From NCBI RefSeq assembly GCF_006345805.1, contig NC_043007.1, positions 63,488,001 to 63,552,000 of the forward strand: a stretch of DNA of 64,000 nucleotides. Reading direction: 5' to 3'. Made by a program: the position numbers and the translations under genes. The notes beneath the pieces are model-generated. The model ran no database searches. It was given only the letters and a program-made list of their open reading frames with translations, and had not been told where the DNA came from. Shown here in pieces: positions 30,510 to 50,454 of this stretch. Within the stretch, counting starts at the first letter, position 1. Every line of letters starts with the position of its first letter. This DNA comes from Octopus sinensis (Eukaryota).

Positions 30510-30926
30510 ATGCTTGAAGACGAAGAACAAACAACAACGATGGATAAGACCAATAACACATCCAAAAGTTCGAATGATGATAGTGTTCCAGTTTCCCCGA
30601 AATCTGATTACTCCAATAGTAATGATATTGACAAGCAGTGCCAGACAGAAGAGAACACTTTGAGTGTGTCCTCAGACAGTTCGATCGCGAGTGTTAAAGT
30701 AACCCCTCCGAAAAAAACCGGTCGCCAGCTTACAAAAGTGCAAGAAATGGACAGAGAATTAACTGGGTGGATAAATGGTATTCATGCCGATGGTAAACTC
30801 AACGAGCTGACTCGTGAAATGATCATTGAAAAGGGCCGGCTTATTGCCAAAATGAAAAAGATCTTGGATTTTGCTGGAACAACGAATTGGTACACAAGAT
30901 TTTTAAGGCGGAATTTCTCCGAGACT
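30510..30926 (+). CDS. Coding exon 1: acidic/Ser-rich N-terminus plus CENP-B-type (Tc5 transposase) HTH DNA-binding domain
   Basis: EMDRELTGWINGIHADGKLNELTREMIIEKGRLIAKMKKILDFAGTTNWYTRFLRRNF fits the HTH_Tnp_Tc5/CENP-B pattern (LxxW ... reMIxeKAxxla ... FxxSxxWxxRFxxR). A consensus donor GTAAGT lies at 30927, right after the domain. Confidence 0.85.
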
Positions 30927-33900
30927 GTAAGTATCATCTTTCTAGATTGTTTTCCATATACTTCAGAAGAACCACTTATTTAAAATTCATTCATCTGCTC
31001 CGTTTTATTTATTCTTTTCTTCCATATCTCGATGGCTGTAAGATTGCTTTGTCGTGACAATTTTAAAAAATCATCTTTATTAGAATTCTTTATATGCTTG
31101 TACTTAAATTTAAGACAAAATGTGTGCTGCTACATAGGAGTAGAGAAAGAACGAGAAAAGCCAGAGGAGTTATCATTGAGCTGAGATCAGACATTTTCAT
31201 CAGCCACTTTTGCCAGTTACATGTAAATACACATCTTGTTAACACATTGAACTAAATATCTTTCTAAATGATAATTAAGTTATCGTTAACATATTTAAAT
31301 CTAATAAGCTAAAAAATAAATTGAATTAAGAAATACTTAAGCATGGAAGCAAAGGTGTTAGCTCAAGTAGGGGAGACAAATCTAGACAGGTTTCGCTCTA
31401 TTACACCTCCTCCGCAAAGCCTAAACTTTGCCATATTTTCCACAATAGGGTTGAGAACCACTAAACAGACGTGAAAAGATTTTTTTTTAACTCAGAGATG
31501 TCAGAAAGCAATAGTTTGAAGTTGGTGTTAATGTGTTGACACTAACTTACTGCAGTAAGCATCAAAAGTCTAATGAGAAATATTTTACCCGTGGTGAGAA
31601 GGAAAAGACAACATTAGCTCCATTACTGATACTATTTTAATCATTTCAGTAAGCACAAGACAACTGTTAGATATTTTTTTCTGCCCATGTTTATACAAAC
31701 CAAAATATCAAGTAATTAACATCAGTTATATTCACATATAGTTCTAAAACTTCTTTCATTCTCTATTTCTAGACATGTTAAAATAAAAAGATTTTTCCAT
31801 TCATTTTAACTATGTAGTAATAATAAATCAGTAATCAAATCTCTATATATTTAGCTATCATATGTACCATCTGTTTAACTGGCAGTAGAATATATATAGA
31901 GAGTACAGTAAATAGGAAACAAATAAAACTACTGTATATATTTTAGTAACACACTCTCAACATATGTTCACTGTTCATGATGATCTCTCAACCATATCTT
32001 GACACCTTCAGTGATGTGTCCTTTAAATTCAAATGAACATAGGAAAGAACTTTTTTTTTAACCTTCATTTTTATTTTCCTATTCTTAATAATCCATATTC
32101 ATTCTTCCATACACATATGTTGGATGGTTTTGCAAAAGTTGATGGTATGAAGCATTACACAACAAAGAGTAGTAGTGATAAAGTAGGAGGACATATCTAA
32201 GAATTTTGAGTACAACTTGAGATGACTGAAGAGTGAGACACATTAAAAGATGCATCTTTTAATGCATTCTCACACTTGTCTTCAGTTCTTTAGACAGCTT
32301 TTTAATGAATTAATTCTGTCTGTGATAAAGGTCAATGAAATATAACACAAGTCTTTGACAATGGGTTGATAGAATTGTTAGAACAAAGGGAAAAATGCTT
32401 TGTTGTGTATGTCCCAGCTCTTTGCTCTTAGTACCCAGGTAGATGTGTCAAATTTGTATCCGGCTGACAAAATAGTGTTTTGTTTACAAAAAAATTGAAA
32501 GAGAACTTGAAACTACATTTCTATTTTTACATGAAAACTCCATGACATCAGATAGTGCTTGTTGTGGAAGTCACTTGATGTTGTTCACAATGTGATGTCA
32601 GAGAAAGGAAGGTTGCTCTAACACACCACCCAGTTTAACACAATTACTGGTTTAGAGTGTTTAGCACTTAACATTGTCATGGATTTTGACTCCCATTTTA
32701 CTCCACATCTGTTTTTGATGGAGCCATTCTGGTTTGATATGTGATGTGGATACTATTAGGATAGGTTTAGCAATTCATTTTTTGATGTAGAGCAGCAAGT
32801 CATTACCTGGATATTACAATAGAACTCATAACTTTGAGGTTAAAATTATCAAAAAATTTATTTAAAGAAATTGTTTTGTTGCTATTAGATTTTCCTTATG
32901 TTAATCATAAAGTAAGTGCTGATGCCATGTAAAAATACTGGTGATTGTGCCACGTAAAAATACCCTGTACACTCTGTAAAGTAGTTGACATTAGGAAGGG
33001 CATCTAGCTGTAGAAATCAAGCCAAAACAAACTATGAAACCTGGTGCAGCCCCTGTCCTTGCTAGTTCCTATCAAGCCATCCTAACCATGCCGGCAAGGA
33101 AAACGCCTGTTAAATGTTGATGATGGTGATATTGGGGTTGATGTAATCAGTTAGTTTTTACTCTAAATTTGTTGCTTTCTGTTTATGTGACCAAAACATA
33201 ATTATCATTATTTTCATGTACCTCTGAAGTTTGCTAGAGGGAATGTATAACTCCAGTTTTCAGTCTGCTCAGCATGTGTGTTTTCTCATGGACATAATCT
33301 AATCTCTGCAAGCCAATAAATGAAAACACTTGTCTGTTTATAATAATATTGTTATTTAGCTCTAGATCAGTTTTGATTCAACAGGCCTATGATCAAAGTC
33401 ATTCCAACGATGACCATCCATTGTCTTTGTATTCCTAAACTAGATGTTTCCAATATAATTATTTGTAACAGATTGAATAACCTTTTTGGCTCATTACAAT
33501 ATTGTTGTTTATAGCAGTGAATTATGCCATCCTGTTGTATCCACTTGCTTTATTTTTTTATCTAAATTTCCTTCTGCCACTCCCAAATTCTTAACTTTTA
33601 TAGAAACATCTGCAATATAAGCTAATGAGAGTGTCACTGTTTGGTTATTTGACATAGTAGGCAAATCATCGTCCTCAAATCACCACACTCTGTTATCTTA
33701 AATAAGGAAAGGAGACATTAAATAATCTTGCCCTACACACCACTAAAAAGTGTGGGTGGCCATGACTAGAATGCTATTGACCATAGGCCTGCTTAATCAA
33801 AATTGATTTGAGTTTAAATAACACCTGCAACAGCTAAGTTTTTGAATAGGAGCAACCAGTTGAATTATGGATGTAAATGCATGCCTTTTTTGAGATGCAA

Positions 33901-35589
33901 GGTATTGTGCATATAGGAAATGATTTTCAATGGAAACTTCAAAGAAAAAATAAATTACTGTTGAAAGGGAGAAAAAAACCCTTTAAAGAGTTATTTGTTG
34001 TTGTGGGTGCTCATATTGATGGCAGAGGAGGATGAGCATCAATGAAGATGGCTATGGTGAATGGTGTTTGTAAATAGTGAAGTGTTGATAGTGGATATGG
34101 TTGTTGTTTTTTGGTGATGTTAACACAAAATAGCAATTAGGTGATAACTGTGAAAATATGATTGTTTGATGTAGTGGGAACTTATTAGAGTGATAACATC
34201 TGTGAAGGCTAGAAACAATAGATATTAAACAAGTAATTTCTCTCTTATATGTGGTGTTAATATAATGGATATGTGGCTAGCATGCACTAAATGACAGACT
34301 GTAGTTTGTAAAGATAATGTAGATTAAAAAAGAAATTGATTTAAATTAAAGCGAGTTAATAAGTTTAGGGAAAATATATAATTTTCAGTTTTTAAGTAAA
34401 ATCTTTTTATCAAATAATTTATCCTGGAGTTTTCTTAAATGTTTTAATCGGGATTATTTGATACATCTTTAAGATGAATAATTTTACTATACTGCATTCA
34501 CCCCATTAATTTCTGTACTCTAACTTTAAAAGCAAATATTGCATATGTGTGTATTAGGAACAGCTTCTCATTTAGATATGTGCTATTCAAAACAAACTTG
34601 TTTTAGTTTTTATTGCTGCTTTTTTTTTTTATAATTGTACTTGTTTGACCACTTACTACTTGTATGCATGTATAGGAATTTTTAGTGGTTAAAAAATGTA
34701 TACTGATATCAATTTATTGTTCCTACATTTATGATTAAGAATGGAGCAGTCATTTCACCTGGGTCCTTACCTAAAAGTCATATTGCACAAAGCAATTAAT
34801 AGGATTAAATGGATCATTAATGTCTGAAATAGACATTTTAATAATTTGGTACAGGAATAACACGCAAACAAATTTTAACAACAGACGCAACATCTATTAA
34901 AAACAAAAAAGAATCACACAAAGTAAATAAATAGCAGCTAAGCAATTGAATAGCTGAATACATCATTGAAAAGCTTGTTATGTTGAACAGGATACAATAT
35001 GCATTACACTTAATCATAAAGTAATATCAAAAGCTGGAACATTAGAAATCTCCCATCAATAACAAACAGCAAACCTGTTAATAAACTATAAATGGCTAGT
35101 CTTCCAGAACAAAAGATAAGTTAGTCAATACAGCAATAAAGGCTGTAGGTTCAATCTCTGAAAAACAACTCAAGAGAATACCAACTGATACATTCTGTCA
35201 GCAATACATCCAAGATGAGAAAAATAGTTTGAGAAACAAACATTTATAAATCTAATTGTGATAGTAAAACACTATATGAAAAAGCATCTTATTTAAAATA
35301 TCACTACTACCAGTACAAAAAAAGAAAACAAAACATAACAAAAAGGAATAGAAGTTAGTTATAGAATCAATATCTTAATAGCAGTATGTAACTCAAAACT
35401 TAACACTTATATAATACACAATTATAACTTAATGCTACTGGTCAAAAATTTAAAAGCCTGAAGGTGGCTAGTCAGACACATAAAGAGTATTTCCATGGGT
35501 CTCCTAAACATGACAAAAAAAATGTAATACCAACTGCCAGTACAGAAGTTCTCATCCAGAAGGTAACACAGAAGTGTTAAAATGGATCT

Positions 35590-36110
35590 TTGAACATTAT
35601 TGTTGTTGTTGTTGTTGTTATTGAGTGAGAGAGCAGTGCATGCCATCAAAGTGACACTGGGGTAAAATATACGAAGCCCAGTATACCCATCATGACAACC
35701 CGTTTGATAAGGGTACACCAGGCACATTCATCACAACCAAACGTGCACGATATGGTGATCTCATATCAAGATAAACAACGCATGACCTTGCAGGTGGGCC
35801 CCAGTTAGAATTTTCTTCTGGTCGAGTAGCCCATCCCGCTCAAAAGGTCCCTGAATAAGGATTGTTTAAGGATGTTGAACGAACCACCCATGTTTCCAAA
35901 GGTGAATTATCCAAACCTCCAAGAATTCCTTTCAACACACGGCTATGATGCTCCCCCACTACTCCTGCTTGTAGTCAGAGATGCACATATCGTCAGCCAC
36001 TAAGAGACATGGTCAACTGGTTATGGTCAAACAAATGACAAGTAAATCTGTGGTATTGAGCAGAATATTTGCTGTAGCCCATCTTTTATACCAAGACAAA
36101 ACAATGTACA
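35590..36110 (-). mobile_element. Retroposon 3' fragment with (AAC)n tail
   Basis: Higher-GC block ending in a (TTG)n/(TTA)n tract on the plus strand; family not identified. Confidence 0.45.
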
Positions 36111-36111
36111 T

Positions 36112-39100
36112 GCAACTGTAAAAGAACAGAGAAGTATTACAACAGAGAAAAGCAACACAATGGAGAACATACAATCACTCAATAGTCGAATAGAGAACAA
36201 AATTGTAACTGCCTACTCCTCAAACAGAAATAATGTGGAAAATACTATGATAACTGATATCAACACAGAAAATAACAACTCCAACAACATGGAACAGAGA
36301 AGCTTAACAGAATGAATAGCGACAACAAAAATATTGATGAGAACACAGCCAATACCAATGTCAACACCAGCAACAGAGAGGCAGGTGTATTTGGAAGTAA
36401 CAATAGTAGTAACCATGTGAACAATTCCACCACCACCATCAACAGGGAGAGCAGAACAAGTAGATTTGCAGCAGCATCTGCAAAATGACAACAAAAGCGA
36501 TGTTAGCCCTGGCCCGCAAACTCATAAAAAGAGAAAAAAACCTAGGCAAACCTTGCAATCCCAGCCAAAGTGGAGGTAGAAATTGAGAAGAGGACAGTAA
36601 AGTATAGGTGTATCTCGGCAGAGATGGCAGAGATCAGAGAGGATGTCGAATGCATTCAAAGAGACTGAAGTTTTGGTACCATCTTGGTCCTTTTTAAAAC
36701 AGAAGATCTGGCCATGAAGCATTCGGTGGGAGCCTGTAAAAGTGACCAGCTTATAATGTACCAATCGTACATGGGCAAAAGAACAATGAAAGTTTGAGTT
36801 CACAGAATAACACCAGATATCAACATATGGCGGCTTGTGGGATGCACGATCGCAGAGGGCAGCAGCACTCTCCTCTTAGAAGTCCTGGATAAAAACCACA
36901 AGACTTGGAGAACATCCCAGACCATGTCTGCCTCAAGAATGGGATGAAATTACCCTTGATCACTGAGGGCAGAAGGCCTCATTGCTTTGCTTGTGGTGAA
37001 GCAATACACCTACAAGCGCACTGTCCTCAGCGAAAAGGTACAAGTGCCTGTAGACATCCGTTGACACCAATACCAGGGCTTGGAAAACAAAAAACAGCAC
37101 CAGCTGTAGAGAGATCACCACCAACAACAGGGAAAGCAGCAAAAATAGCAACAATGGTGGCAGCAGTGGGAGGCGTAACAACAACACCAGCAGGAAAACT
37201 GTTGGAGAGGTCAACCACGAAAACTAACTCCTTGCAACCAAGCTCAACAACCCCACCTCTCACAAACAAGGATGCAGGAAAAGATACACATACAAACACA
37301 AATTCACTTCCACACAGAGAGGAGGAGGTTGTAGCAGACATTGGTTCAACCACATTAAAAAGTGATGATGAGGGGAAACAGAGTAAATCCAAAAAACTGA
37401 AAAGAAGTCACAGAGGCGAGACATCTTGTCCTACACCAAAACAAGATAACAAAGAAACTACACATACACCCACAACAAATGCAGACACTTAGACAACTCC
37501 TGCAGCACCACAGTCATCAACTAAAGCACCACAAACACCAAAATCCCGAAAGGAAACTCACACCACAAATGCAACAAGAACAGCAAAAAACAGTGATGCA
37601 GATTTGTGCGGAATTTCAGCAGCACTTTGCTGAACTGTACAGGGCACATGGTGGTGAACTTCACTTCCTACCTTTCAGCCAGGGATGTGGAGTTCTGCAA
37701 AATGCTGATAACAGCTGAAGATATATGTGACACGTTGGCTAGTTGCACGAGGGGGCAATCTCCAGGATTAGATGGTCTGCCCTTCAAGCTTTATATTCAT
37801 ATGTCAGACTTGTTTGGTGAGCTCTTGCAGTGTTTTCTGCAACTGGCAGCAGAACGGGAAAATCCCCAGATCTGTGAGCCATGATGTGGTGGTACTACTG
37901 AGAAAGGATCTGAACAAGGGGCACATTGTTGATAACTGTAGGCCTGTAACTCTGCTAAATGCAGATTACAAAATTTTGGCCAAGGTGTTAGCAAAGAGGT
38001 TGGCGCTTGTCATTGACAGACTGGTGGGTGATGAACAGACTTGCACTATCTTCAACCGATCTATCGACGACAATCTCTACCTCACGCGATACATCATAGA
38101 GAGGTGTTGGTAAAGAACCTGGCATAGGTGGGGCCCTAATCAATTTGGATCAATCGAAAGGTTTTGATAGGATTGACCATCAGTATTTGGAGGCTGTCCT
38201 TAAGGTGGCTGGTTTCGGTCCTGTTTTCAGAGGTTGGATCACTGCAATGTACAGTGACATCTGTTCGTTGGTCAAAGTAAATAGCCACCTGTTGGAATCG
38301 TTTAGCATCGCATGTTCAGTCCGTCAAGGATGCCCACTCTCATCTTTTCTCTATGTACTGATATTCAAGCCATTTCTATGGAAGCTGGATGTTTTGAGGG
38401 GCATCACAAGTGAACTAAGATGCGAAAGATTTGTGTCGGCATATGCAGACGAAGTCACTGTGATAGTGTTGGATGTCTCGGAAATTGAGATGGTTGGCAC
38501 TACCCTAAGGGAATACAAAGTGGTGACAGAAGCAATGATTAAACAGAAGTCAGTCGGTCTGCAGCTTGGCCCCTGGAGAGGCAGATCCTTGCCAACCAAC
38601 AGCTTTGTTGGGTGCTGGATGGAAGGACTGGTTAAGTTCCTCAGGGTCTGGTTCAGTCTGGACCTCCAAGTGGACAAGAACTGGGGTAAGGTGACAAACA
38701 GGATGGCCAATCTCACCCAGAAATGGGCCGAGAGGAAGCTGTCCTTGAAAGGTCAGGTGGAGGTGGTGAATGCATACATCCCATCCATCATGTACTACTG
38801 CCTGACTTCATGGCTGAACAGGCTGGTGCGCTTCCTGTGGAAGGGACAGGTACCACTTGTCAGACAGTCCATTTGCTATCAGCACTCATTGCGTGGAGGA
38901 CTGGGCATGCATGGTTGACATGCACTGAGGCTGCAACATCTCTGGTAATACCTTAACAGTGAGCAAGTATGGCTACTGTTCGTTGAAAGTGCTTTTCCTT
39001 AGCTCATCTCCTTGACATGTCTACAGTCCTGGATCAGGCATAGACCAAGGCAGGGCACTTGGCACCTAGAGTGTCTCCAAGTGCTCACGGCCCTTGTCCA

Positions 39101-39940
39101 GTCAGGCAGTGTGGTCGGTGGAAGTTCTATCTTGGAGTTCTGTGGAGGACAAGAGTGATGATGTTCTCAGAGAGGTTCTGAACATTGGGCGGGATCAACT
39201 GGCTGGCCTCTTCCGGAGGACTTTCAGGCTGGGGCCTATGGATAACTTTCAGAAATCCCTGGCTTGGAAGTGCTACCAGAGGGCTCTGTCAGTTCGCAAT
39301 AAGCTTTACAGGCATAGGTATGCAGTCAGACGGGCTTGTCTGAGATGCATGCAGAGTAATGAAACTGTTCTGCATGCTCTCATACAGTGTCCACACATTG
39401 CTGCCTTGTGGAGCTTTGTTGAACAGTTATTGTCACATGTAGGATGGATCCAGCTATCGTCCAAGTCCATTGTGAAGATCATCCTGCCTCCTTCCTTTGG
39501 CTGGGAAGGACAAGCAGTTTTTCTCTGTTTGGTGGCTATGGCAAAAGCCTCATTGACTTTTTCAGGTTCCACCTGAAAAGGAAAGTGAGGCTGGAGAGAG
39601 AGGTGCTGTCACCCAGTCAGTTTGTTGAAAGGTGGATGAATGTGGCAAGAATGGCCCATGTGAATGGGCCTACTCTAAGTGTGCGCCTGTAGACCAGATG
39701 GAATGAAGAAGAGAGGTGTGCCTACCTTAGGGGCCTTTGGTGTTAGGGTATCGAAAGTGTGTGAGCTCACCTCTCAGTGGAACTCCCCCCTATTGGGGAA
39801 GTACATTGTTGGTTTAATCTCCTTGTTAATTTTTTTTTTTTTTGTTTACACGTTTAACGCCACTGTCCCTCATCTGTGTATCATCTTTTATGTTTTGTGT
39901 TTGGCCCTGGTGGCCAATAAAGAAAGTATTATTATTATTC
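36112..39940 (+). mobile_element. Tx1-like (L1 clade) LINE, degenerate, endonuclease domain apparently missing
   Basis: ORF1 zinc knuckle CFACGEAIHLQAHC. RT motifs PGLDGLP, RPVTLLNADYKILAKVLAKRL, DQSKGFDRIDH, SVRQGCPLS, AYADEVTV. C-terminal CLRC...ETVLHALIQCP; AATAAA and (ATT)n tail at ~39917-39940. Confidence 0.92.
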
Positions 39941-41120
39941 AAAATGAAACCTAACACTAATAAGATATTGTGATAAAACAAACTGAAATTGGATGGTAGT
40001 GGTGTTTTCAGACAAGACATATCCCTTCCTAGACATGTCTTAATATCATGAAATTGTCATGTTCATTGCTTTCTTATACAAAGTTTTGAGGGATAAGCAA
40101 AATGAAAAATAAAATCAGGAGAGTTAGGAGTTCAAAAGTGGATTATGACTTCGCATGATAGCAGTAACCATTCTACTTTCTAAAACTGACTGTGATGCCA
40201 TTTTGTTTTGGCATTTATACATTTCCCAAGGATACTAACATTGTAAATGAAATGAGACATTTTTTTATTATATTGCAGACTCGCTTAACCAAATGTAACT
40301 ACTGCACTTCAGCAACTGTACCTTATCTGAAAAATTTTAAAGCTGCACCATTTTAACTGTGTGTCAAGCTAAATTTTCAACATGAAGAATGAATATTACC
40401 AGACCATGCTTCCAAGTTCAAAAAGTAAAAATTAATAAATTAGTTCTGTACAGAGGAAGGTGTGACTGTATGGGTAAGAAATTCTCTTCCCAACCTGGTT
40501 TAGGGATTCAGTCCCACTCTGTAGCACTCTGGGTGTCTTCTACTATAGCTCCTGGTTGGCCAAAGCCTTATGAGTGTATTTGGTAGACAGAAACTGAAAG
40601 AAAACTGTCATATATACACATCTATAAAATGTGTGCATGTTTGTTTACATTTTGCTCACTTCTATGAAAGTTGTTACATATGTGCAATGTTGTCAGTTCT
40701 CTTGTCAACACATCATTTGCTTGCTTTACTCTTTTGAAGCCATGTGGAATAAAAGGACCCTTGCTTGAAAAACAGGTAAGGGTCAGCAACAGGAAGGACA
40801 TTTGACTATAAAGCAGTGCCTCAAAAACAAATTCATCTAACCCATGCATGCATAGACAAATGGATGTAAAAACGAATGATAAAAATAAACGAACAATTTA
40901 GATTAAACAATATTAATCAATGTCCTCTCTCTGTTTTTAGTACTAATGCTACTATAATTCTCTCTATGCAGCTCTATCTAAATACTGCCTGTGTCCCTAG
41001 CTTTCCTTCTTCAGTCATCCTTACTGTAGCCATAGTGGATGTAATAGTTACTATATGGAGTATTTTCTTGTAGAGGGATTGATAGGTGCAGTTAACCCAA
41101 GCAGGATTTGAACTCGAAGG

Positions 41121-41548
41121 AACTTAGCTATTATTCTTCTGCCGATGGTATCTTAATAATTCATTCCCTAAAATAGCTGTTTTATGGTATTTAGAGTTAA
41201 GTTCAAATTCAGTCCAAGTCAAAAGACTCATATGCATAAAATATGAACAAATCATTATTTACTGGAGTTGACATTGTACCTACATAGAAGAGTGGTAAGT
41301 AGATATGGGAAAGCATTGAACCTTGCAGTAACTACCTTTACTGCAAGGTTCAATGCTTTCCCATATCTACTTACCACTCTTCTATGTAGGTACAATGTCA
41401 ACTCCAGTAAATAATGATTTGTTCATATTTTATGAATATGAGTCTTTTTACTTGGACTGAATTTGAACTTAACACTAAATACCATAAAACAGCTATTTTA
41501 GGGAATGAATTATTAAGATACCATCGGCAGAAGAATAATAGCTAAGTT
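41121..41548. repeat. 428-bp palindrome (211-bp arms, 6-nt loop, 3 mismatches)
   Basis: 41121-41331 is the reverse complement of 41338-41548; loop CTACCT. Confidence 0.97.
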
Positions 41549-43446
41549 AGTGTGAGTTTTATTTCAGGCTTTCTAAACCTCATCAGTAAAATGTAAATTT
41601 CTCTATACTTGTTAAAGTAGTGATAAGACAATTACTAAATAGATGTACAATATTATACTTGTGTTCATTTGTTTTTACATCCCTTTTCCATGCTAGCATG
41701 TGTTAGGCATATTCAGCATCCAACAGTTGTATGCTATTTCTGTGTTAACCTTTGCTTGTTTTTCAAGTAAAGGATCTCTTATTTCACACATCTTTGAAGG
41801 TGTGAATTGAGTGGGAAATTTGTTGTCAGTAGAAGTAACAGCAGCAACACTGCTTGTAGCAAGCGTCTTTCATAAAGCACAAATATAAACATACACACAC
41901 ACACACACATAATGGGCTTCTTTCAGTTTCTGTCTACCAAATTTACTCAAGACTTTGGTTTGTCTGGGTACAAAACATTTATCCAAGGTGCTGCACTGTG
42001 GGACTGAACCCGAAACCATATGGTTGCGAAGCTAATTTCTAAACCATACAACTATACCAACACTTTGAGAGAAAATTAGCACTTTTATTCAGGAACACCA
42101 TCAGTATTAAAAAGTAGTTAAGTTAATGATCACTGCTTTGACAAGTTTATGCTTTGCTGAGCAGGTATAAGACCAAAACATGTCTAGAGTTATCTCCTGT
42201 ACATACTGGAATAATATACTATAATATATAATTATTATTATTATTGGTGATAATAATGATGATAACTGTCAAGAATTGCCATGCGGGTGGTAAGCTCCTG
42301 GCAAACTATATTATGCAAGTCAGCTTTGACTCTTGTCTTAGGTATTTCACCTATTCTACTAATACTTATCAGAAAAGGCACAAACATCACAACTACAATC
42401 CTTTCACTCTGTACAACAATAGTGCTGATCTTTTATCGCAAACACATAAAGATCTAGCAGTTAACTTAATGTGGAATAAATATTTTATCTATTATAGTTG
42501 TAGTGGCATAAGATCTTGTAGTTTATTTAAATCATTAAACAGTATAAAAATAGGAAGGTAATCAAAGTAGCCTAACAATGCCAAGTTAGAGAAAAATGAT
42601 CTGTTCAATATTTCATTATCATCATCATCATTTTAATGCCCACTTTTCCATGTTTGGATGGATCAGATAGAATTTGTTGAAGTAAATTTCCTACCACTGG
42701 ATGCCCTCCTTGTCACCAACTTTCACTTGTTCCCAAATAAGATATTTTCTCTATGGTTAGACATGTTATGCGAAAGATTGGAAACAAACAAGTTTGTATG
42801 ATAGTGTTGCTTGTTGACAACTATTGTGCAATGTCTAGACAAGGAGACACTAGCACTCCTACACACACACACTGTCTGCTGGATCTATTCACAAAATTTT
42901 GGTAAGCTCTGCGTTATACTAGAAGACACTTACCGAAGGTGCCATGTGAATCACATGGTTAAGAAACAAACTTCTTTACTGCAAATTTAATATTCCAGCT
43001 TCTTTTTACTTTAAAAAAAAAACCCTAATCACTAACTAGAAATTTTGCATTGAGAGCTAAAGTGTTTACAATACTACACATGTCAAAGATGCACAAAGAT
43101 GAGTAGATAGCAATATTAATACAATAAACTATTAATAAATAGTCAAGATGATGGTGACTGTTAATCAGCGGTTAATCTGTGTTGATAGAATGCCTTTTAG
43201 ACAAGTCTGTCATGTTTCTGAGCTCTAATGAATATAAGAAATGTGTAAATGTTGCAGCCTATGTAAAATATGTTGCATTTTTTGCTATCTTTTATAGTTA
43301 AGGTAGCATAGGATTTTGTTTATTTCAATAGAGCATGCTATAAACTCTAAAGTGCTTGGTTGTTTGCCACTGTGTGCCCAAGGTGCCATACAGTGGGGCT
43401 GAACGAGCTTCTTATCCACACTGCCATGACTGTTTTTTTTTACATC

Positions 43447-43477
<31 letters not shown>

Positions 43478-43521
43478 CATACATACTAGAAATTATTGTT
43501 ATGTTGTACTCTTTTAAATAG

Positions 43522-43643
43522 GATGTTGGCAAGCATTTGAAAATGCTTTCTCCAATCAATTCTGTGAAATTTATGGAAGATTTTGATCCAGAAAAAAGTA
43601 GCAGAGAAATGCGTAAAATGAACCGAAGAATTTATCGAGAGAA
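43522..43643 (+). CDS. ARL14EP: Coding exon 2 of the ARL14EP-like gene
   Basis: DVGKHLKMLSPINSVKFMEDFDPEKSSREMRKMNRRIYRE. FDPEKSSREMRK resembles the FxPExxxRexRxL motif that precedes the Cys-rich domain in ARL14EP. Canonical AG/GT; phases match both neighbouring exons. Too short for the ORF track. Confidence 0.85.
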
Positions 43644-45307
43644 GTACGTTTTCTGTATTTTTCATTCTTGAATGTATTTTATTTCTCAATATTGTGGCCA
43701 TTAATCAAATTTGCTTTTGTGACTTTATTTCTGAAGAATAGATTGACTATAATTTTATATATTGGTATTATGTTGTGTTGAAGTTGACCAATGAAAATCT
43801 CAATTTATCATTCTTGTTTTAAGATTTAATTTTAATATGTGCACTTGGAGGCACATAGTCTTATGTGGGTTGATATTAAAAGGGCTAAACAGTTTTTGTT
43901 CAGTTTGAGTTTTAGGAAATATCTTTGTTGTGTCACTAACTTGGTGGGAATTTAAGAAGGAACCTTTTAGTTTTTTTAACATCACACAAACTTCTGTTAG
44001 CATTTCTTTGTCTTTATTTTATTTTTATGGTCTGGCAGCATATTTTAAAATAGAGAAAACAAAACATTCTTTGATACAAATAACATCTTTCTTTTCCTTT
44101 CTATCCATATTCATTACCAGAAAATGCTGCTGTATGGTGGGACTTATCTTAGCTTTTATAACATTGAATAGTTGAGAGACATACCTCTCGTTTTAGGACT
44201 CTTGAGGGCTAAGACTCTTACCAAGTAGGATGTTAATGAAGATTATCTGGTACCCAGGGAGATGAAAACTGAAAAGTGTATTGTCTAAATACATATAAAA
44301 TCTCAATATTAAATATTAAGTGTATAAATATCTGAAATAAATTATTGTTAGTAGGTTTCAATTTTTTTATGTGGTAAGAAGTTTGCTTTTGCACCACATA
44401 GTTCTGGGTTCAGTCCCACTGCATGACACCTTGGGCAAGTGCCTTCAACTCTAACCCTGGGCAACCAAAGTCTTGTAAGTGAATTTGATAGACAGAAATA
44501 AAAGAAGCTTGTCATGTGTGTCCCCCATGCCACCATTTGACAACCAGTGTTGATTTGTTTCAGTCCTTATAGCTTAGTAGTTCTGCAAATGAGATTAGAA
44601 TAAAAGTTCCAGGTTTTAAAAACAAAGTATTGGAGTTGACTCATTCAAAGTAGAGCCTCCACATGACCACAGTAGAATGATTGAAACAAGTAAAAGATAG
44701 AAGATATTAACCTTGTATTTAGAGATGAAATTTTTAAAATTTTTTACTGATGTGCTGTTTCATTCAGAGTGACTGCTTGTCATCCTGGGAGTGCAAATTA
44801 GTACCAGACTGAATTTGAAACAAGCCATTTGAAATATGATGAAGATGTGAATATTAAAATTGCTTTCATATCTAAAGATAAGGTTAATATTGTGTGTATA
44901 ATATAATGTATATACAAAAGTGAATCAGCACTAGCTGTATTATTTTGTTTCAGTGAAACTGCTTAGAGATTTATTTGTTAAAAATATAAGGCTTTCTTCA
45001 GAATGCTAGTGGATCACCAGATTCACTGTTTCAACCTGATTTGATCTCCTCAGTAACAAATACTACAGATGTTCTGAGCCAAACCAAAAATGCTTGTTCT
45101 AATATAGAAATTTATAAGCAAAACATTTACTGATTTGTGCAAAAGCTGGCCAGGCAGAAACTAAATTAATATATGCACTTGAAACAGTTACAGGTTCAAG
45201 TGTCTGTGTGTATAACATTTATGTTTATACAAATGTGGAACAGAACCAGCTATAATATTTTACTTTAGAGAATTATTTTAAAATTTAATCTATGAAATAA
45301 GTTTATA

Positions 45308-48291
45308 TCTCTATATCTATATACAGCAAAATGTCTGTGTGTCCTTTATACAAATCCACAGTTTTTCATATAAAAAGCTCGCATTTTCTATGGGCTTTCA
45401 AAACTGTCTGAAGTTGGTCGTGAAGATCTTTTCATTTCCCCAGTCACCCCAGAAAGCCATTAAAAAAATTGATTAACCGACCCCTTATGCCCATAAGTTA
45501 TGGGCATATCCATATAAAATTGCTAAAACATAGATATTTGTACACAGTGCATGTGTACAGCTAGATACGCCAATAGACTTCCAGCTGTTTTTTGATTGGA
45601 CAGAGATAATTTTACCCTTGACAGTTGAATGCGCATGTGCATTTGCAGACAATCTGTATGACTCAGCACATTTATGTGTTTTGCGAAGACGTGTTATCAT
45701 ATGTTTTGGCTTTCAAACGTGCAAGCTTTTTTGATTTGAGAAATGCAGGGAATAATTAACGAGTTAGACCAAGTGAATGACAAGAGAGTGGGATTTTCAC
45801 GAAAGACCAAATATGCTTGATATGCTATCATTCCTTAAGTATGCCATAAAAGAGTTGGAGCCTATTCAATGAATCTATTTAGGAAGGGCTTTACTTTTAT
45901 GCTTTCGGTTGATTTAAGTTATCCAGCAAGAGCCCAGGATGTTTTATTCAAGTAGGATTAAAAATGAAAAATGGGTAAGTTGACCCCCACCAAGGGATAT
46001 TCATAAAAAACATTTATTTTTATTTGCATTCAGCCTAAGATCGAGTCATTTGCTACCTACACAGCAGGGACATAGGATTATCAAGGTGATCCTTTTGGTG
46101 CAAAAAATCTTAATTTGATTCAAGTTTACCAAAATTGCCAATCAATCAATGGAAACTCAATAAAACTATTCCTTGAGGATTTCCGCATTGAAATTGACTG
46201 CAACCTTTTCTTTTAGCCCTAACTTGAGGTACGAATGACCTAAGATACAAAGAGTTTCTTAAGCGAAATTTCATGCTTTTGTGTTTTGAGATACGAGTGA
46301 AAATTGAGATGCTAATTAATTTCCAGTCACATTTTTCCGCTTGCTAGGAAATTGGATAACTTTGTCAGACCTGTTTATTCATTTCATTTTATTGGTGAAG
46401 GTTTGCTTTCATGGTGGTCTTTATCAATTTTCTAACATGCTCCCCCATCACCTTCAACAAAGCCACTAAATTTGCGATGATTAATTACCCAGTGCAGCTG
46501 CACCTCTGGATGGGCTCAGTCAAACGCGTTAAAAAACATATGTGATGGAAAGGCAAGCATAATTTCCGAAAACAAAGAAAGGGATTTAGCTCAAAATGAA
46601 GTAATCTTTATCTGTAAAAAGCCTAACCAAACAGAAGCACACCAGTACCTAAGACAATTCAAGGCTAGAACTCACGAGTCATACAGTGTTTCTGCACTAC
46701 CTTGATTAAGTAAAAACTTTTTATTGAAACACCAGAAACGAACAAGCACATGATATGAAGCTTTCAGTTAGCGGGACTGTGCACATGTCATAATCGGTCA
46801 AAAAAAAAGGAAGAAGAAAGCAAAAAACTCGAATTTGACTGCACCACAGCATGATTTTGAAAATACACATAACCATCGTTTGTTGAGTTCGCATTCAGCC
46901 TGAGGTCAAATCATTCGCTATCTACATAGCATGTGACAAGGGTACTCAGGTTATTACTTATGGTGTGTGAAATCTTAATTTGATTAGAGTTGGCTCATAA
47001 CAATCCCTTACAGGCTTCCTCATTCAAATTGAATTACAATGTTTTCTTTTAGCCTTAACTTCCACATAATAAGCTCTTTGTTTGCTACTGCAAATTGATT
47101 GGGTTTTTACACTTCACAAATGCCCTATGTTTTTCTAACTTGAATCCACTTTCCACTAATTAATTAACCCGTGTATCAAACACCACAAAGAGCGTTTTCC
47201 CACATAGACACTTAGTCATCATGTGCGTGAGCATGGCACTTCGTATGACCTTGAACATGCGCGTGTACTGGCCAATGCTGCTGAGGGACATATGTAAACG
47301 TTTGACCTTAGATGCGCAGCCTTGGATTTGTGTGTACTAGATCATTATCCAATAAGATTCAATGCGCTAATTAAGCATGAGGTTGCATGCTTTGGCGCCC
47401 AGACTCAAACACTTTTCACAATTATGCTTCATGACTCAGTTTCCGTTACTGACCACAAGCTTTGTTCATAAAATTCCACTTTACCTATCACTTTTACTTG
47501 GGTCTGCCAGGCCATATTTTTGCCTAGCAACTAATCAATTAACACTTAAAGCATCTGCTGCAGTTTGACCCCAATTTTTTTGCGTAAAAATAACCTTTTT
47601 TTGCTTGATATCAGTTCACATTTTGATTATTGCTTCTTTTGATTAACCAAAGTGTTAATTAGGGAATTTGCCATAATTCGGCATCATTTTTTTGAATAAA
47701 AATAGACGTTTTCGTGTTTGATCTCACTTTTTGATTACTGCTTCTTTTGAGCAGCCAATGTTTTCACCAACCTACGAGCACAGTAAACAGTTTTTGTTCT
47801 TGAAACCTGTCTACGATTTCTTTACTGTTTTTAAATAGCCCTTTGTTTTCCATTTGGGTACCGCTTCTGCCATTATCGTTTTGATTATTGCTTTGCCATT
47901 ACTTAAAATCGTGTGCTTATCGGTTGCCCCAAGCTATCTCACTTAGTCCACAAAAACTAAATCCATTTAAAGTTCACTAATTTCAATAAATTGCCAAAAT
48001 GCCCCCAAAGAAGAGAGCTTGCATTGGAAGAAAGACGGCTGATTCAGAAGCTAAGAGGGCCAGAAGGGCCAATGAGGCGCCCCTAGACAGAGCTACTCGA
48101 TTAGCTTGGAATGCCACTGCCACAGACAAAACAAGGGCAGTCGAAACCGCAGAACAAACATAGGCCTGCCATTCTCGAGATGCCGCTGCCACGGCCAGCG
48201 CAAGGGCAGCCGAAACCGCAGAACAAACACAAGCCCGTCGTTCTTGAGATGCACTAGCACTAGACCCGGCAACGCCGGGTCATAGTGATAG
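45308..48291 (+). mobile_element. Helitron C: ~3-kb non-autonomous Helitron
   Basis: Inserted between A and T. 5' TCTCTATATCTATATA; 3' GC hairpin GACCCGGC-AAC-GCCGGGTC (48263-48281) followed by ATAGTGATAG (CTAG variant). RepHel N-terminus MPPKKRACIGRKT...ETAEQT starts near 47999. Confidence 0.82.
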
Positions 48292-48547
48292 TATTCTATA
48301 TAATAGGTACGTTGTTCTTTTAAACATTTGAGATATAAATAGATAATTGATAAATAGTTTATCTGATATTTTTACCTTCTGAAATCAAATATACACTAAA
48401 TTTCGGTTAAAGAAACCCAAGATTAGGTTACAAACAATATGATACAGAGTAATAGGATATTACGTATAACCTTTCAGTTATACACCTTGTCTACTGTGTA
48501 CTCTTGAAACAATAATTTTTGCCTATACACACACACATGCACACATA

Positions 48548-50019
48548 CAGGGTGCAGTGAATATATTGTCTAAATTACACTAAAATGAAAATAACACTGA
48601 CATCTCATTTTAACATATATTTACCAAAATTACATAAAAAATAAAATCACTATTGACTTCAACCACAGCCTCCAGACGATTTCGGAATCTTATGCAACTG
48701 TTTTGGACAGTCTCCTTGTTTAAGTTGGTGAATACTGCCATAATCCTTGCCTTCAGTTCATCTTTGGTGTTACAAGGAGTTTTCTTGGTTTCTCACTCAA
48801 CTGTGCCCCACACATAATAATCAAGGGAGTTGCAGTCTGGGGAGTTAGGTGGCCAGATGTTAAAGGTGGTGTGGTTTCAGAAATTATCTGACAGCCATGA
48901 CTGGGTTCTTCTGTTTGTATGGCATAGTGCAGAGTCCTGTTGCTAGACATAGGGTCTTCCAGCAGCCACCCTCTTGACCCAGGGCAGCAGCACCTCCTCC
49001 AGGCACTTTATGTAGGCTTCCATATTGAGTCTGAGGCTGTGTGGGAAGATGAATGAAGGCATCACTCACCAAATCCTTTGTGAGCCGCTCTCCGGCTATC
49101 TATCTGCGGCTTTATATAGCTATGGTAAGACCTCACCTGGAATTTGCATCACCGGTCTGGAACCCCTATCTTGCCCAGGATATCAATCATCTGGAAGCTA
49201 TTCAGCGACGTGCAACCAAAAGAATACCCTCCATCAGGCATTTGCCATATCCTGAACGCCTTACTTCCCTGGGCATGGACACATTGAAACTCCGACGTCT
49301 GGCAGCTGACTTGGCAGACACCCATAAAATTATCAACCATCGTACAAACAATAACTCTGAGCACCTTTTCAAACTCCACCCATCTAACACCCGTGGACAT
49401 ATTTACAAAGTAAGAAAACAGCACAGCTCCCATGACTTCAGGAAACATTTTTTCACACTGAGAGTTGCTGAAGCATGGAACAAACTGCCAGCATCAGTTG
49501 TTAGTTGTCGGAGCACTGCATCCTTCAAAACTTCCATGCTTCCTGAGATTCACCAACACTACACTTGATTTTCTCCCCTCCATACACACACAAGCATGTA
49601 TCTGACTCATACATTGTTCGCTTTCCTGACATTTCTACATTACTGCATGTACTTTATATGCACTTTCTGACAAGTTGTGGTGCACCTGAGCACTGTATAC
49701 AATAATTTCATTATTATTACTATTATTTTATTATAATGTCGCCATCACTAGCGATCACTTCAACCCCCATGATGTTGATTGTATGTTTGATTTTTATCAC
49801 TCTTGGTACATCTGTTCGTACTGGAGCTTCCAGCGTGAATGCCAAGCAGTACAGCATGTCGTTTCCAAATTTCTGGCAGAGTGAATTGCATCATGGTGTT
49901 GTTTTTCTCACAGACTGTGCCCAACTGGCCCTACCATACTGTGTAGTTGACAAAATCAAAAACAAGCAGTGCACGGAATTAAAAATATAAAATGGCGACA
50001 ATTTACCCATTGCACCCTG
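48548..50019 (-). mobile_element. Mariner-like (probably maT/DD37D-type) deletion derivative
   Basis: TA-flanked imperfect TIRs CAGGGTGCA.TG..TA.ATTGTC. Minus-strand QQDSALCH...WPPNSPDCNSLDYYVWG. Interrupted by a CR1-like insertion. Confidence 0.88.
49063..49734 (+). mobile_element. 5'-truncated CR1/L2-type LINE nested in the mariner element
   Basis: RPHLEFASPVWNPY...LEAIQRRATKRI...RRLAADL...TRGHIYK...FFTLRVAEAWNKLP (ORF 49053-49568), 3' UTR and (ATT)n tail; removing it restores the mariner reading DGDIM|PSFIF. Tail fragment of the same family at ~8440-8495 (-). Confidence 0.92.
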
Positions 50020-50231
50020 TATTTATGCATATACTAAATGCACACACGTACATTTATATACATATATATATAAAGAGAGTGCAATACAACAAATATGTTT
50101 GAATATATTGTAATTTTATTTATTTCAAGTTTCAATTACCAAAGTATATTTCTGTAAAAATATATTTCTTGAAAGCTATTCAAATATGATTTGAAATAAT
50201 ATTTTCTTTATTTCTTTTTTTTTAATATCAG

Positions 50232-50454
50232 CATGAAAACCAACCAAATGTATGACGAAACTGGTCGACTTCTTGACAACAGCAAAGATGTTTGTGATTG
50301 TTTGGATGAGGACTGTCCAGGATGCCATTTTCCATGTAACAAATGTGGTTCTGAAAAGTGTGGCACTGAGTGTCGATGTAATCGGAAGTGGGTATATGAA
50401 GTTGTGGAAATTGAAGGCTCAAACCTAGTGATTAGAAATGTTTCTGTAGCATAA
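50232..50454 (+). CDS. ARL14EP: Terminal coding exon: ARL14EP (ARF7EP_C) cysteine-rich domain
   Basis: YDETGRLLDNSKDVCDCLDEDCPGCHFPCNKCGSEKCGTECRCNRKWVYEVVEIEG matches the ARL14EP C-terminus (YDxxGxL...CDCLDEDCxGCxxxCxxCGSxKCGxECRCxRKWxYExxEIEG), all nine Cys present. Strong polypyrimidine acceptor; AATAAA at 50791. Confidence 0.95.

What the first reader, a model, noticed from the sequence alone, without database searches (positions are those of the whole stretch)
30510..50454. Chimeric gene: transposase-type CENP-B HTH exon spliced in frame to ARL14EP
Seen: three exons with canonical splice sites whose phases fit exactly (0/0, then AA+C), giving a 253-aa ORF with an N-terminal Tc5/CENP-B HTH and the ARL14EP FxPE motif plus Cys-rich domain. 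The ORF track shows only two apparently unrelated ORFs 20 kb apart; the 122-nt linking exon is invisible to it. Established: human ARL14EP and nematode ARLE-14 are not known to me to carry a CENP-B-type HTH, and host-transposase fusion genes (SETMAR, KRAB-transposase fusions) arise by exon capture. Inference: a lineage-specific host-transposase fusion replacing the usual ARL14EP N-terminus. I cannot confirm it is undescribed.
Basis: partly seen in the sequence, partly recalled or inferred. Interest (0 to 1): 0.92.

Follow-up and report, generated by a model that had tools for sequence, protein, structure and literature searches.

The report
Octopus ARL14EP gene with transposase-type DNA-binding exon
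This is a real three-exon octopus gene, already in RefSeq as 'ARL14 effector protein-like', whose first exon encodes an unannotated CENP-B/pogo-transposase-type DNA-binding helix bundle joined to the domain that in humans and worms binds the heterochromatin enzyme SETDB1; cuttlefish and a second octopus gene carry the same fusion, so it is old.

Summary
Exons 30510-30926, 43522-43643 and 50232-50454 (+) have GT-AG introns and splice in frame to 253 aa.

- **Annotation.** The identical protein is an NCBI model, 'ARL14 effector protein-like [Octopus vulgaris]'.
- **ARF7EP_C.** Residues 143-240 match it strongly (E=5e-34).
- **HTH in the window protein.** Residues ~70-137 form a basic three-helix domain. 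It scores below Pfam's HTH_Tnp_Tc5 cut-off (18.6 vs 22.2 bits).
- **HTH support from elsewhere.** The cuttlefish orthologue passes the cut-off (25.7 bits). A profile search of 1.84 billion proteins returns almost only proteins that carry Tc5/CENP-B HTH domains. The predicted fold's top PDB match is the CENP-B DNA-binding domain.
- **Age.** The same three-exon layout occurs in Argonauta, in a second octopus paralogue (C22) and in Sepia esculenta mRNA contigs, so the fusion predates the octopus-cuttlefish split.
- **Selection.** The HTH is under strong purifying selection (dN/dS about 0.05).
- **Exon swapping.** Scallop has a THAP exon and abalone a disordered exon at the same phase-0 intron, so N-terminal exons were swapped there.
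- **Donor.** No donor transposon can be identified.
- **Function (inferred).** A DNA-tethered SETDB1 cofactor.
- **Literature.** No paper found describes the architecture.

The parts
29298..29914 (+). Two upstream blocks (29298-29397 and 29597-29914) conserved with Argonauta. They are candidate promoter or 5'UTR sequence; this is not verified.
   Evidence: blastn of the Argonauta locus L029 against the window gives 72% identity over 107 nt and 67% over 326 nt. These are the only non-exon alignments of that size.
30510..30926 (+). Exon 1 (417 nt, aa 1-139, ends in phase 0). It begins at the ATG at 30510 and ends at donor GTAAGT.
   Evidence: It is 100% identical to NCBI protein P0001. Exon 1 of the C22 paralogue ends at the same residue position, with donor GTATGT.
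30510..30704 (+). Acidic, Ser/Asn-rich, disordered N-terminal tail (aa 1-65).
   Evidence: pLDDT is below 50 for aa 1-70 in the full-length model. pI is 4.05. It evolves fast: 42% aa identity to Argonauta and dN/dS 0.28.
30705..30926 (+). CENP-B/Tc5-type helix-turn-helix domain (aa 66-139; Pfam match aa 79-135, which is nt 30744-30914). It is basic, with three helices.
   Evidence: - Pfam PF03221 hits the same profile span (3-60/66) in all four cephalopod proteins. Sepia scores 25.7 bits, above the 22.2 cut-off.
- A profile search of 1.84e9 proteins gives 14 hits at E<=0.001, 12 of them non-self. Of the 12 non-self hits scanned, 10 carry PF03221 above cut-off.
- The AF2 model has pLDDT 81. The top Foldseek PDB hit is 1HLV_A, the CENP-B DNA-binding domain (prob 0.99, TMq 0.72, rmsd 0.9 A over 57 columns).
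- pI is 10.1.
- dN/dS is 0.048 against Argonauta.
30927..43521 (+). Intron 1 (12,595 nt, GT-AG, phase 0), enlarged by repeats.
   Evidence: The Argonauta intron 1 is only about 3.2 kb.
36893..39576 (+). Decayed non-LTR retrotransposon inside intron 1. It is a passenger, not part of the gene product.
   Evidence: RVT_1 is split over two frames (37772-38113 and 38100-38918), and zf-RVT lies at 39070-39576.
43522..43643 (+). Exon 2 (122 nt, aa 140-179 plus 2 nt). It starts the ARF7EP_C domain and contains the F-M-E-D-F-D-P-E motif.
   Evidence: A 122-nt exon with the same phases occurs in Argonauta, the C22 paralogue and scallop.
43644..50231 (+). Intron 2 (6,588 nt, GT-AG, phase 2).
50232..50454 (+). 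Exon 3 (223 nt including the TAA stop; aa 180-253). It encodes the Cys-rich cluster C201-C229 (nt 50293-50379) and the C-R-C-N-R-K-W motif.
   Evidence: The invariant residues in 31 ARF7EP_C proteins are C201, C203, C208, C211, C215, C218, C223, C227, R228 and R231.

Best explanation
The window holds one of two octopus paralogues of ARL14EP (C11orf46 / ARLE-14).

**What the gene encodes.** The protein has three parts:
- an acidic disordered tail;
- one basic CENP-B/pogo-Tc5-type helix-turn-helix domain, encoded entirely by exon 1;
- the ARF7EP_C domain, encoded by exons 2 and 3.

**How it arose (inferred).** The HTH exon was joined to the two ARF7EP_C exons at a phase-0 intron that is conserved across molluscs. 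This happened before octopuses and cuttlefish diverged. The fused gene later duplicated at the DNA level, with its introns kept.

**How it most likely works (inferred).**
- The ARF7EP_C Cys-rich domain binds the SETDB1 H3K9-methyltransferase complex, as shown for human C11orf46.
- The family strengthens the enzyme's association with chromatin, as shown for worm ARLE-14.
- In coleoid cephalopods the added HTH would give this cofactor direct DNA contact. That would tether or direct SETDB1 to DNA, in a way analogous to KRAB-domain fusions.

**Shown versus inferred.**
- Shown: the gene structure, both domain identities, conservation, purifying selection and age.
- Inferred: DNA binding, SETDB1 binding in cephalopods, the targets, and a transposase as the ultimate donor.
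For: **Gene model.**
- Searches give the exons, splice sites and frame.
- The identical protein is in NCBI.
- Argonauta has the same exons.
- The exons are the only conserved islands between Octopus and Argonauta.

**Fusion transcribed as one mRNA.** The 297-aa HTH+ARF7EP_C ORF lies on RNA-seq contigs of 2 kb or less from 118 runs. One of those runs, SRR31864757, is a Sepia esculenta transcriptome (PMC11917092).

**Paralogue.** The C22 copy has the same three exons and phases.

**HTH homology.**

**Selection.** Against Argonauta, dN/dS is 0.048 for the HTH, 0.045 for ARF7EP_C and 0.28 for the tail. Against a closer octopus contig the HTH gives 0.083.

**Conserved phase-0 intron with different first exons.**
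- Scallop exon 1 (330 nt) encodes a THAP domain and exon 2 is 122 nt.
- Abalone exon 1 is disordered.

**Function of ARF7EP_C.**
- The human Cys-rich domain (aa 209-237) is needed for SETDB1/MCAF1/KAP1 binding, and R236H abolishes it (PMC6739341).
- ARLE-14 binds MET-2 and is required for robust MET-2 chromatin association and repeat silencing (PMC6105299).
- The Cys pattern and both Arg of the CRCxRKW motif are invariant in 31 proteins.

**HTH charge.** The HTH has pI about 10.
Against: - I have no junction-spanning reads for this paralogue itself. Support is the NCBI model, conservation and the orthologous Sepia mRNA.
- The window protein's own Pfam HTH score is below threshold.
- A sequence-only search of PDB did not find CENP-B, and the Foldseek E-value is weak (0.71) despite prob 0.99.
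- Only the second of CENP-B's two HTHs is present, so sequence-specific DNA binding is uncertain.
- No donor transposon or transposon remnant was found.
- The full-length AF2 model is poor (pLDDT 62).
Confidence: 0.6

Rival explanations
1. The fusion was host-to-host exon shuffling, not transposase capture. The HTH exon would come from a cellular multi-HTH (Brinker/psq + Tc5-type) gene of molluscs rather than directly from a pogo/Tc5 transposon.
For: - Several best non-self profile hits are DDE-less arrays of BrkDBD/CENP-B_N + HTH_Tnp_Tc5 domains. The named ones are from Magallana gigas, Lottia gigantea and Saccostrea echinata.
- tblastn with a pogo-like copy from the same genome finds no DDE or other transposon remnant in the window.
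- The genome's pogo-like copies are only 27-33% identical to the HTH.
Against: - PF03221 is the DNA-binding domain of pogo/Tc5 transposases.
- DDE-bearing transposases are also among the hits, for example the Pseudonaja cluster with DDE_1.
- After roughly 250 million years or more, a donor remnant would not be expected to survive.
- The DDE-less arrays are themselves probably domesticated transposase domains (inference).
Confidence: 0.3
2. The HTH is retained as a protein-protein or structural module and does not bind DNA. The gene would then act as an ordinary ARL14EP, a non-targeting SETDB1 cofactor or a cytoplasmic ARL14 effector.
For: - Only one HTH is present, where CENP-B and pogo use two (no CENP-B_N or psq match).
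- ARLE-14 is not needed for MET-2 targeting in worms.
- Human C11orf46 reaches chromatin through histone H3.
Against: - The domain is basic (pI about 10), preceded by a K/R-rich arm, and ends in a basic third helix, TRFLRRNF.
- The fold superposes on DNA-bound CENP-B at 0.9 A.
- dN/dS of 0.05 shows the domain is constrained. This does not distinguish between binding partners.
Confidence: 0.25
3. The model is a gene-prediction artefact. Exon 1 would belong to a separate HTH-only transcript, or be a decaying duplicate, and would not be joined to the ARL14EP exons at this locus.
For: - No RNA-derived contig encoding exactly the 253-aa protein was retrievable.
- Sepia clusters include HTH-only read-through products of 189-201 aa.
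Against: - The orthologous junction lies within single mRNA contigs in Sepia.
- Exon sizes and phases are identical in Argonauta and in the C22 paralogue.
- dN/dS is 0.05-0.10 over the Octopus-Argonauta distance, with dS about 1.1-1.4.
- Exon 1 has no in-frame stop before a consensus GTAAGT donor.
- An independent NCBI model gives the same protein.
Confidence: 0.04

Closest known systems
ARL14EP / C11orf46 (human, mouse) and ARLE-14 (C. elegans), cofactors of SETDB1/MET-2
   Same: - The C-terminal ARF7EP_C domain scores 117 bits.
- It has the FxxDFxPE motif, the invariant Cys cluster and the CRCxRKW motif.
- In humans the Cys-rich part binds SETDB1-MCAF1-KAP1. In worms the family strengthens MET-2 chromatin association.
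   Different: - The N-terminus is a CENP-B/Tc5-type HTH, which the papers read here do not report for the human or worm proteins.
- The window gene is the faster-evolving of two octopus paralogues. The stem branch in the tree is 0.23, and it reads SPINSVKF where most relatives, including the C22 paralogue, read NPGKF.
Host-transposase fusion genes with pogo/Tigger-derived domains (CENP-B, TIGD/JRK, POGZ, and POGK = KRAB + pogo transposase), and SETMAR
   Same: - A pogo/Tc5-type DNA-binding domain sits in a cellular protein under purifying selection.
- As in POGK, it is joined to a module that recruits the KAP1/SETDB1 silencing machinery. The POGK comparison rests on my own knowledge and was not tested here.
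   Different: - Only one 60-70 aa HTH is kept. There is no CENP-B_N/psq HTH and no DDE domain.
- The partner is ARF7EP_C, not KRAB or SET.
- The lineage is coleoid cephalopods.
- The donor element cannot be identified.
THAP + ARF7EP_C 'ARL14 effector protein-like' isoforms of scallops and oysters
   Same: - The layout is the same: a first exon encoding one DNA-binding domain of a transposase-related type, ending in phase 0, followed by a 122-nt exon and the last exon.
   Different: - The DNA-binding fold is different (THAP zinc finger versus HTH), so this is an independent event.
- These are alternative isoforms in bivalves, judging by the NCBI isoform names.

Membership tests
ARL14EP family (Pfam ARF7EP_C, PF14949) | Match to PF14949 above the curated cut-off (27 bits) | tested here: met
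   117.4 bits, E=5.3e-34, aa 143-240 covering profile positions 2-102 of 103.
ARL14EP family (Pfam ARF7EP_C, PF14949) | Conserved FxxDFxPE motif and the Cys cluster with the CRCxRKW motif (the Cys-rich domain that binds SETDB1 in humans) | tested here: met
   - C201, C203, C208, C211, C215, C218, C223, C227, R228 and R231 are invariant in 31 proteins.
- F156, F160, P162 and E163 are conserved in at least 90%.
- Equivalence of R228 or R231 to human R236 was not tested directly, because no human sequence was in the alignment.
ARL14EP family (Pfam ARF7EP_C, PF14949) | Physical binding to SETDB1/MET-2 | not testable with these tools
   Known for human and worm only.
CENP-B/Tc5-type HTH (Pfam HTH_Tnp_Tc5, PF03221) | Match to PF03221 above the curated cut-off (22.2 bits) | tested here: inconclusive
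   - Window protein: 18.6 bits (not met).
- Argonauta: 18.7 bits.
- C22 paralogue: 20.5 bits.
- Sepia orthologue: 25.7 bits (met).
- All four match the same profile span, 3-60 of 66.
CENP-B/Tc5-type HTH (Pfam HTH_Tnp_Tc5, PF03221) | Reciprocal homology: an unbiased profile search returns family members | tested here: met
   A profile of four cephalopod HTHs searched against 1.84e9 proteins gave 14 hits at E<=0.001 (best non-self 2.8e-26 and 4.2e-11), 12 of them non-self. Of the 12 non-self hits scanned, 10 carry PF03221 above cut-off.
CENP-B/Tc5-type HTH (Pfam HTH_Tnp_Tc5, PF03221) | Three-helix HTH fold like CENP-B domain 2 | tested here: met
   - The AF2 model has pLDDT 81 and three helices.
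- The top Foldseek PDB hit is 1HLV_A, with prob 0.99, TMq 0.72, rmsd 0.9 A and 28% identity. The next hits have prob 0.23 or lower.
- The Foldseek E-value is only 0.71, because the domain is short.
CENP-B/Tc5-type HTH (Pfam HTH_Tnp_Tc5, PF03221) | DNA binding | not testable with these tools
   Only indirect evidence: pI about 10.
Host-transposase fusion gene (transposase domain captured by a host gene) | A transposase-derived domain joined by splicing to host exons in one transcript | tested here: met
   - The spliced ORF is shown.
- Single mRNA contigs in Sepia carry the joined ORF.
- The domain family is that of pogo/Tc5 transposases.
Host-transposase fusion gene (transposase domain captured by a host gene) | An identifiable donor transposon family or a remnant (TIRs, DDE) at the locus | tested here: not met
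   - tblastn with a pogo-like copy from the same genome finds nothing in the window.
- The closest genomic pogo-like copies are 27-33% identical.
- Several best hits are DDE-less host-like arrays.

The most novel reading that the evidence does not exclude
ARF7EP_C may be a portable SETDB1-recruiting repressor module. In lophotrochozoans it would have been fused repeatedly, at one conserved phase-0 intron, to DNA-binding domains of transposase type: Tc5/CENP-B HTH in coleoid cephalopods and THAP in scallops and oysters. The products would be sequence-directed H3K9-methylation factors, an invertebrate counterpart of KRAB-domain fusions, possibly aimed at the transposon families the domains came from.
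Probability: 0.25. Interest if true: 0.8.

Novelty: new variant of a known kind. Interest (0 to 1): 0.55.

Why it matters
How SETDB1 is brought to particular DNA in animals that lack KRAB zinc-finger proteins is an open question.

Here a conserved SETDB1 cofactor carries its own DNA-binding domain of transposase type. That domain has been kept under strong selection since before octopuses and cuttlefish split, and scallops and oysters have a parallel THAP version. Together these give a concrete, testable candidate for a targeting adaptor.

The case also shows a domain missed by routine annotation. The octopus RefSeq models list only ARF7EP_C, because the HTH scores just under Pfam's threshold.

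If the HTH turns out not to bind DNA, this is simply a lineage-specific domain gain in a known family.

Tried and rejected
- **Sequence-only PDB search.** A search with the HTH profile found nothing meaningful. Only the fold comparison found CENP-B.
- **Donor transposon.** In the octopus genome there is one paralogue, and otherwise only weak matches (E of 0.008 or worse). Some of these are real pogo-like copies (L004, L006, L008). Others (L003, L005, L012) are noise with no coherent ORF. tblastn of a pogo-like copy against the window found no remnant.
- **Dating the A/B duplication.** A tree of the ARF7EP_C region is unresolved. It gives (OctB,(OctA,ArgonautaA)) at 80/21 with Sepia in a polytomy. 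dS between paralogues is saturated.
- **Other cephalopods.** A second word-indexed search restricted to the HTH found only the five proteins already known. Squid and Nautilus could not be assessed.
- **Lingula intron mapping.** My exact-match splice mapper found no solution for P0006/L032.
- **Full-length AF2 model.** It was too poor (pLDDT 62, pTM 0.27) for a fold search.
- **Pseudogene reading.** Rejected on dN/dS.
- **Human ARL14EP N-terminus.** I did not compare it, because I did not want to type that sequence from memory.

Full report
**1. The observation**

- Exon 1 is 30510-30926 (417 nt, phase 0), with donor ACT|GTAAGT.
- Exon 2 is 43522-43643 (122 nt), with acceptor TAG| and donor GAA|GTACGT.
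- Exon 3 is 50232-50454, with acceptor CAG|. AA+C makes Asn180 and the stop is TAA.
- The product is 253 aa.
- No + strand ORF of 60 aa or more covers exon 2.

Pfam places ARF7EP_C at aa 143-240 (E=5.3e-34, 117 bits). It places HTH_Tnp_Tc5 at aa 79-135, but only at E=0.0019 and 18.6 bits, under the 22.2-bit cut-off. So the ARL14EP half is certain from the sequence alone. The HTH half needed more evidence.

**2. The gene model is real and already annotated**

A search of about 5.8 billion protein clusters returned an identical 253-aa entry, 'ARL14 effector protein-like [Octopus vulgaris]', also listed in UniRef for two Octopus taxa.

The window is G000:C11:63488001-63552000. Contig C22 has the length (30,097,204) of the contig that carries Octopus sinensis LOC115223330. 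The genome is therefore most likely O. sinensis (inference). The O. vulgaris locus is 98-99% identical to the window.

Argonauta hians has a 245-aa orthologue. Its exons are 393, 122 and 223 nt, with the same phases, and its introns are much shorter at 3.2 and 0.7 kb.

A blastn of the Argonauta locus against the whole window aligns only the three exons plus two blocks 0.6-1.2 kb upstream of the ATG. The exon set is therefore exactly the set of conserved islands.

**3. The fusion is transcribed as one mRNA in a cuttlefish, and it is old**

Protein P0003 (297 aa) has the same HTH block followed by ARF7EP_C. It is encoded whole on contigs of 2 kb or less from 118 sequencing-run assemblies. One of those runs, SRR31864757, is listed as a Sepia esculenta transcriptome in PMC11917092. 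These contigs are therefore spliced mRNAs.

In the octopus genome the HTH exon has exactly one other good match, at C22:26701275 (68% identity). It belongs to a paralogue (LOC115223330, 317 aa) with the same three-exon layout: exon 1 ends ...NFSDA in phase 0 with donor GTATGT, and exon 2 is again 122 nt.

So the fusion predates both the A/B duplication and the octopus-cuttlefish split. From general knowledge, not tested here, that split is roughly 250-300 million years old.

The order of duplication and split is unresolved. The window gene is the faster-evolving copy. It reads SPINSVKF where most relatives, including the C22 paralogue, read NPGKF.

**4. The HTH is a genuine CENP-B/Tc5-type domain**

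Four independent lines agree.
- **Pfam.** PF03221 hits the same profile span (3-60 of 66) in all four cephalopod proteins, and the Sepia protein passes the cut-off at 25.7 bits.
- **Profile search.** A profile of the four 72-aa domains searched against 1.84 billion representative proteins gave only 14 hits at E<=0.001, 12 of them non-self. Of the 12 non-self hits scanned, 10 carry PF03221 above cut-off. For example, P0070 (E=4e-11) matches at 367-428 and its Pfam domain lies at 369-430.
- **Fold.** The AF2 model (pLDDT 81, three helices) has as its only confident PDB match 1HLV_A, the CENP-B DNA-binding domain on DNA. The values are prob 0.99, TMq 0.72, rmsd 0.9 A over 57 columns and 28% identity.
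- **Own genome.** Some of the weak matches are pogo-like transposase ORFs with the F-x-G-S-x-G-W-x-x-x-F-K-K-R-N signature. This aligns with F-A-G-T-T-N-W-Y-T-R-F-L-R-R-N here.

Caveats:
- The sequence-only PDB search was negative.
- The Foldseek E-value is weak (0.71).
- Only the second of CENP-B's two HTHs is present. Residues 1-65 are acidic, Ser-rich and predicted disordered.

**5. Selection**

| Comparison | Region | dN | dS | dN/dS |
|---|---|---|---|---|
| Window vs Argonauta | HTH | 0.069 | 1.44 | 0.048 |
| Window vs Argonauta | ARF7EP_C | – | – | 0.045 |
| Window vs Argonauta | N-terminal tail | – | – | 0.28 |
| Window vs closer octopus contig (L030) | HTH | – | – | 0.083 |
| Window vs closer octopus contig (L030) | N-terminal tail | – | – | 0.54 |

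The HTH is as constrained as the ancestral domain.

**6. How the fusion arose**

| Species | Exon 1 | Exon 2 |
|---|---|---|
| Abalone | 174 nt, disordered, ends in phase 0 | begins GVSKELKML... |
| Scallop | 330 nt, a whole THAP domain, ends in phase 0 | 122 nt, begins TVTKQLRML... |
| Cephalopods | the HTH, ends in phase 0 | 122 nt |

The two ARF7EP_C exons, and the phase-0 intron in front of them, are thus conserved across molluscs, while the first exon has been exchanged.

Whether the cephalopod exon came straight from a pogo/Tc5 element cannot be shown.
- No transposon remnant lies in the window.
- Extant pogo-like copies are at most 33% identical.
- Several top profile hits are DDE-less tandem arrays of Brinker/psq + Tc5 HTHs; the named ones are from oysters and limpets. 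One hit cluster includes a classical HTH+DDE_1 transposase.

I rate a host-gene donor at about 0.3.

**7. Likely function**

From the literature read here:
- Human C11orf46/ARL14EP is a nuclear protein. Its Cys-rich domain (aa 209-237) is required for binding SETDB1, MCAF1 and KAP1, and R236H abolishes that binding (PMC6739341).
- C. elegans ARLE-14 binds MET-2/SETDB1. It is needed for robust MET-2 chromatin association, full H3K9me2 and repeat silencing. It is not needed for choosing MET-2's genomic targets (PMC6105299).

In the octopus protein the Cys pattern and both arginines of the C-R-C-N-R-K-W motif are invariant across 31 family members.

The HTH is basic (pI about 10), has a K/R-rich N-terminal arm, and superposes on DNA-bound CENP-B.

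My inference is that coleoid ARL14EP proteins contact DNA directly and so tether or direct the SETDB1 complex. This is functionally analogous to KRAB fusions such as POGK (an analogy from my own knowledge). DNA binding, SETDB1 binding and the targets are all untested. A non-DNA-binding role for the lone HTH remains a serious rival (about 0.25).

**8. Novelty**

The gene model is public. The octopus entries list only PF14949, because the HTH is sub-threshold.

Full-text searches found no paper describing either the HTH+ARF7EP_C or the THAP+ARF7EP_C architecture. The terms were ARF7EP_C/PF14949, ARL14EP+transposase, ARL14EP+THAP and host-transposase fusion+cephalopod.

I classify this as a new variant of known kinds: the ARL14EP family, and domesticated pogo-type DNA-binding domains.

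The interest lies in the recurrent pairing of transposase-type DNA-binding exons with a SETDB1-binding module.

**9. Limits**

- I have no junction reads for this paralogue.
- Squid, Nautilus and most other lophotrochozoan genomes could not be searched.
- The A/B duplication is not dated.
- The donor is not identified.

Noticed in passing
G000:C11:63561796-63562026 (+), about 9.8 kb beyond the window's 3' end (locus L014:1471-1656): There is a second copy of exon 3, 90% identical at protein level. Its frame closes prematurely after ...GSEKCGTEC. The genome has no extra copies of exons 1 or 2, so this looks like a partial tandem duplicate or pseudo-exon.
   Followed up: partly
G000:C3:59646042-59646305 (-) and G000:C2:153352266-153352529 (-) (L016, L017): Two identically scoring intronless 265-aa ORFs span the exon 2/3 junction of ARF7EP_C at 64% identity. 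They resemble O. bimaculoides LOC106870970, which has the Cys-rich part only, with no FxxDFxPE motif and no HTH. They are probably retrocopies, and the pair may be a recent duplicate or an assembly duplicate.
   Followed up: no
window 36893-39576 (+), inside intron 1: A decayed non-LTR retrotransposon lies here: a Cys/His-containing ORF without Pfam match, RVT_1 split over two frames, and zf-RVT. O. vulgaris shares it. Such insertions account for introns of 12.6 and 6.6 kb here against 3.2 and 0.7 kb in Argonauta.
   Followed up: partly
window 53113-53709 (-): A 198-aa ORF contains a PHD finger (24.6 bits). It is likely the tail of another retroelement downstream of the gene.
   Followed up: no
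window 29298-29397 and 29597-29914: These are the only non-coding blocks that align with the Argonauta locus, and they lie 0.6-1.2 kb upstream of the ATG. They are candidate promoter or 5'UTR sequence.
   Followed up: no
window 30927-30960 (start of intron 1), compared with Sepia read-through product P0083: Read-through after the exon 1 donor gives SET|VSIIFLDCF in octopus and SDS|VRRSIIFLNFS in Sepia. The first bases of intron 1 therefore look conserved over a very long distance, which might indicate a splicing-regulatory element. Sepia runs also contain several HTH-only read-through ORFs of 189-201 aa.
   Followed up: no
window 5419-5940 (-): A 173-aa ORF contains wording typical of a retroviral-type integrase core (…YHTRSNGQAE…), but it had no Pfam hit at E<=0.01.
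   Followed up: partly
Loci L031 (Mizuhopecten) and L033 (Haliotis): The exon preceding the ARF7EP_C exons encodes a complete THAP domain in scallop and a disordered segment in abalone. The phase-0 boundary and the 122-nt (scallop) or 131-nt (abalone) second exon are the same as in cephalopods.
   Followed up: yes
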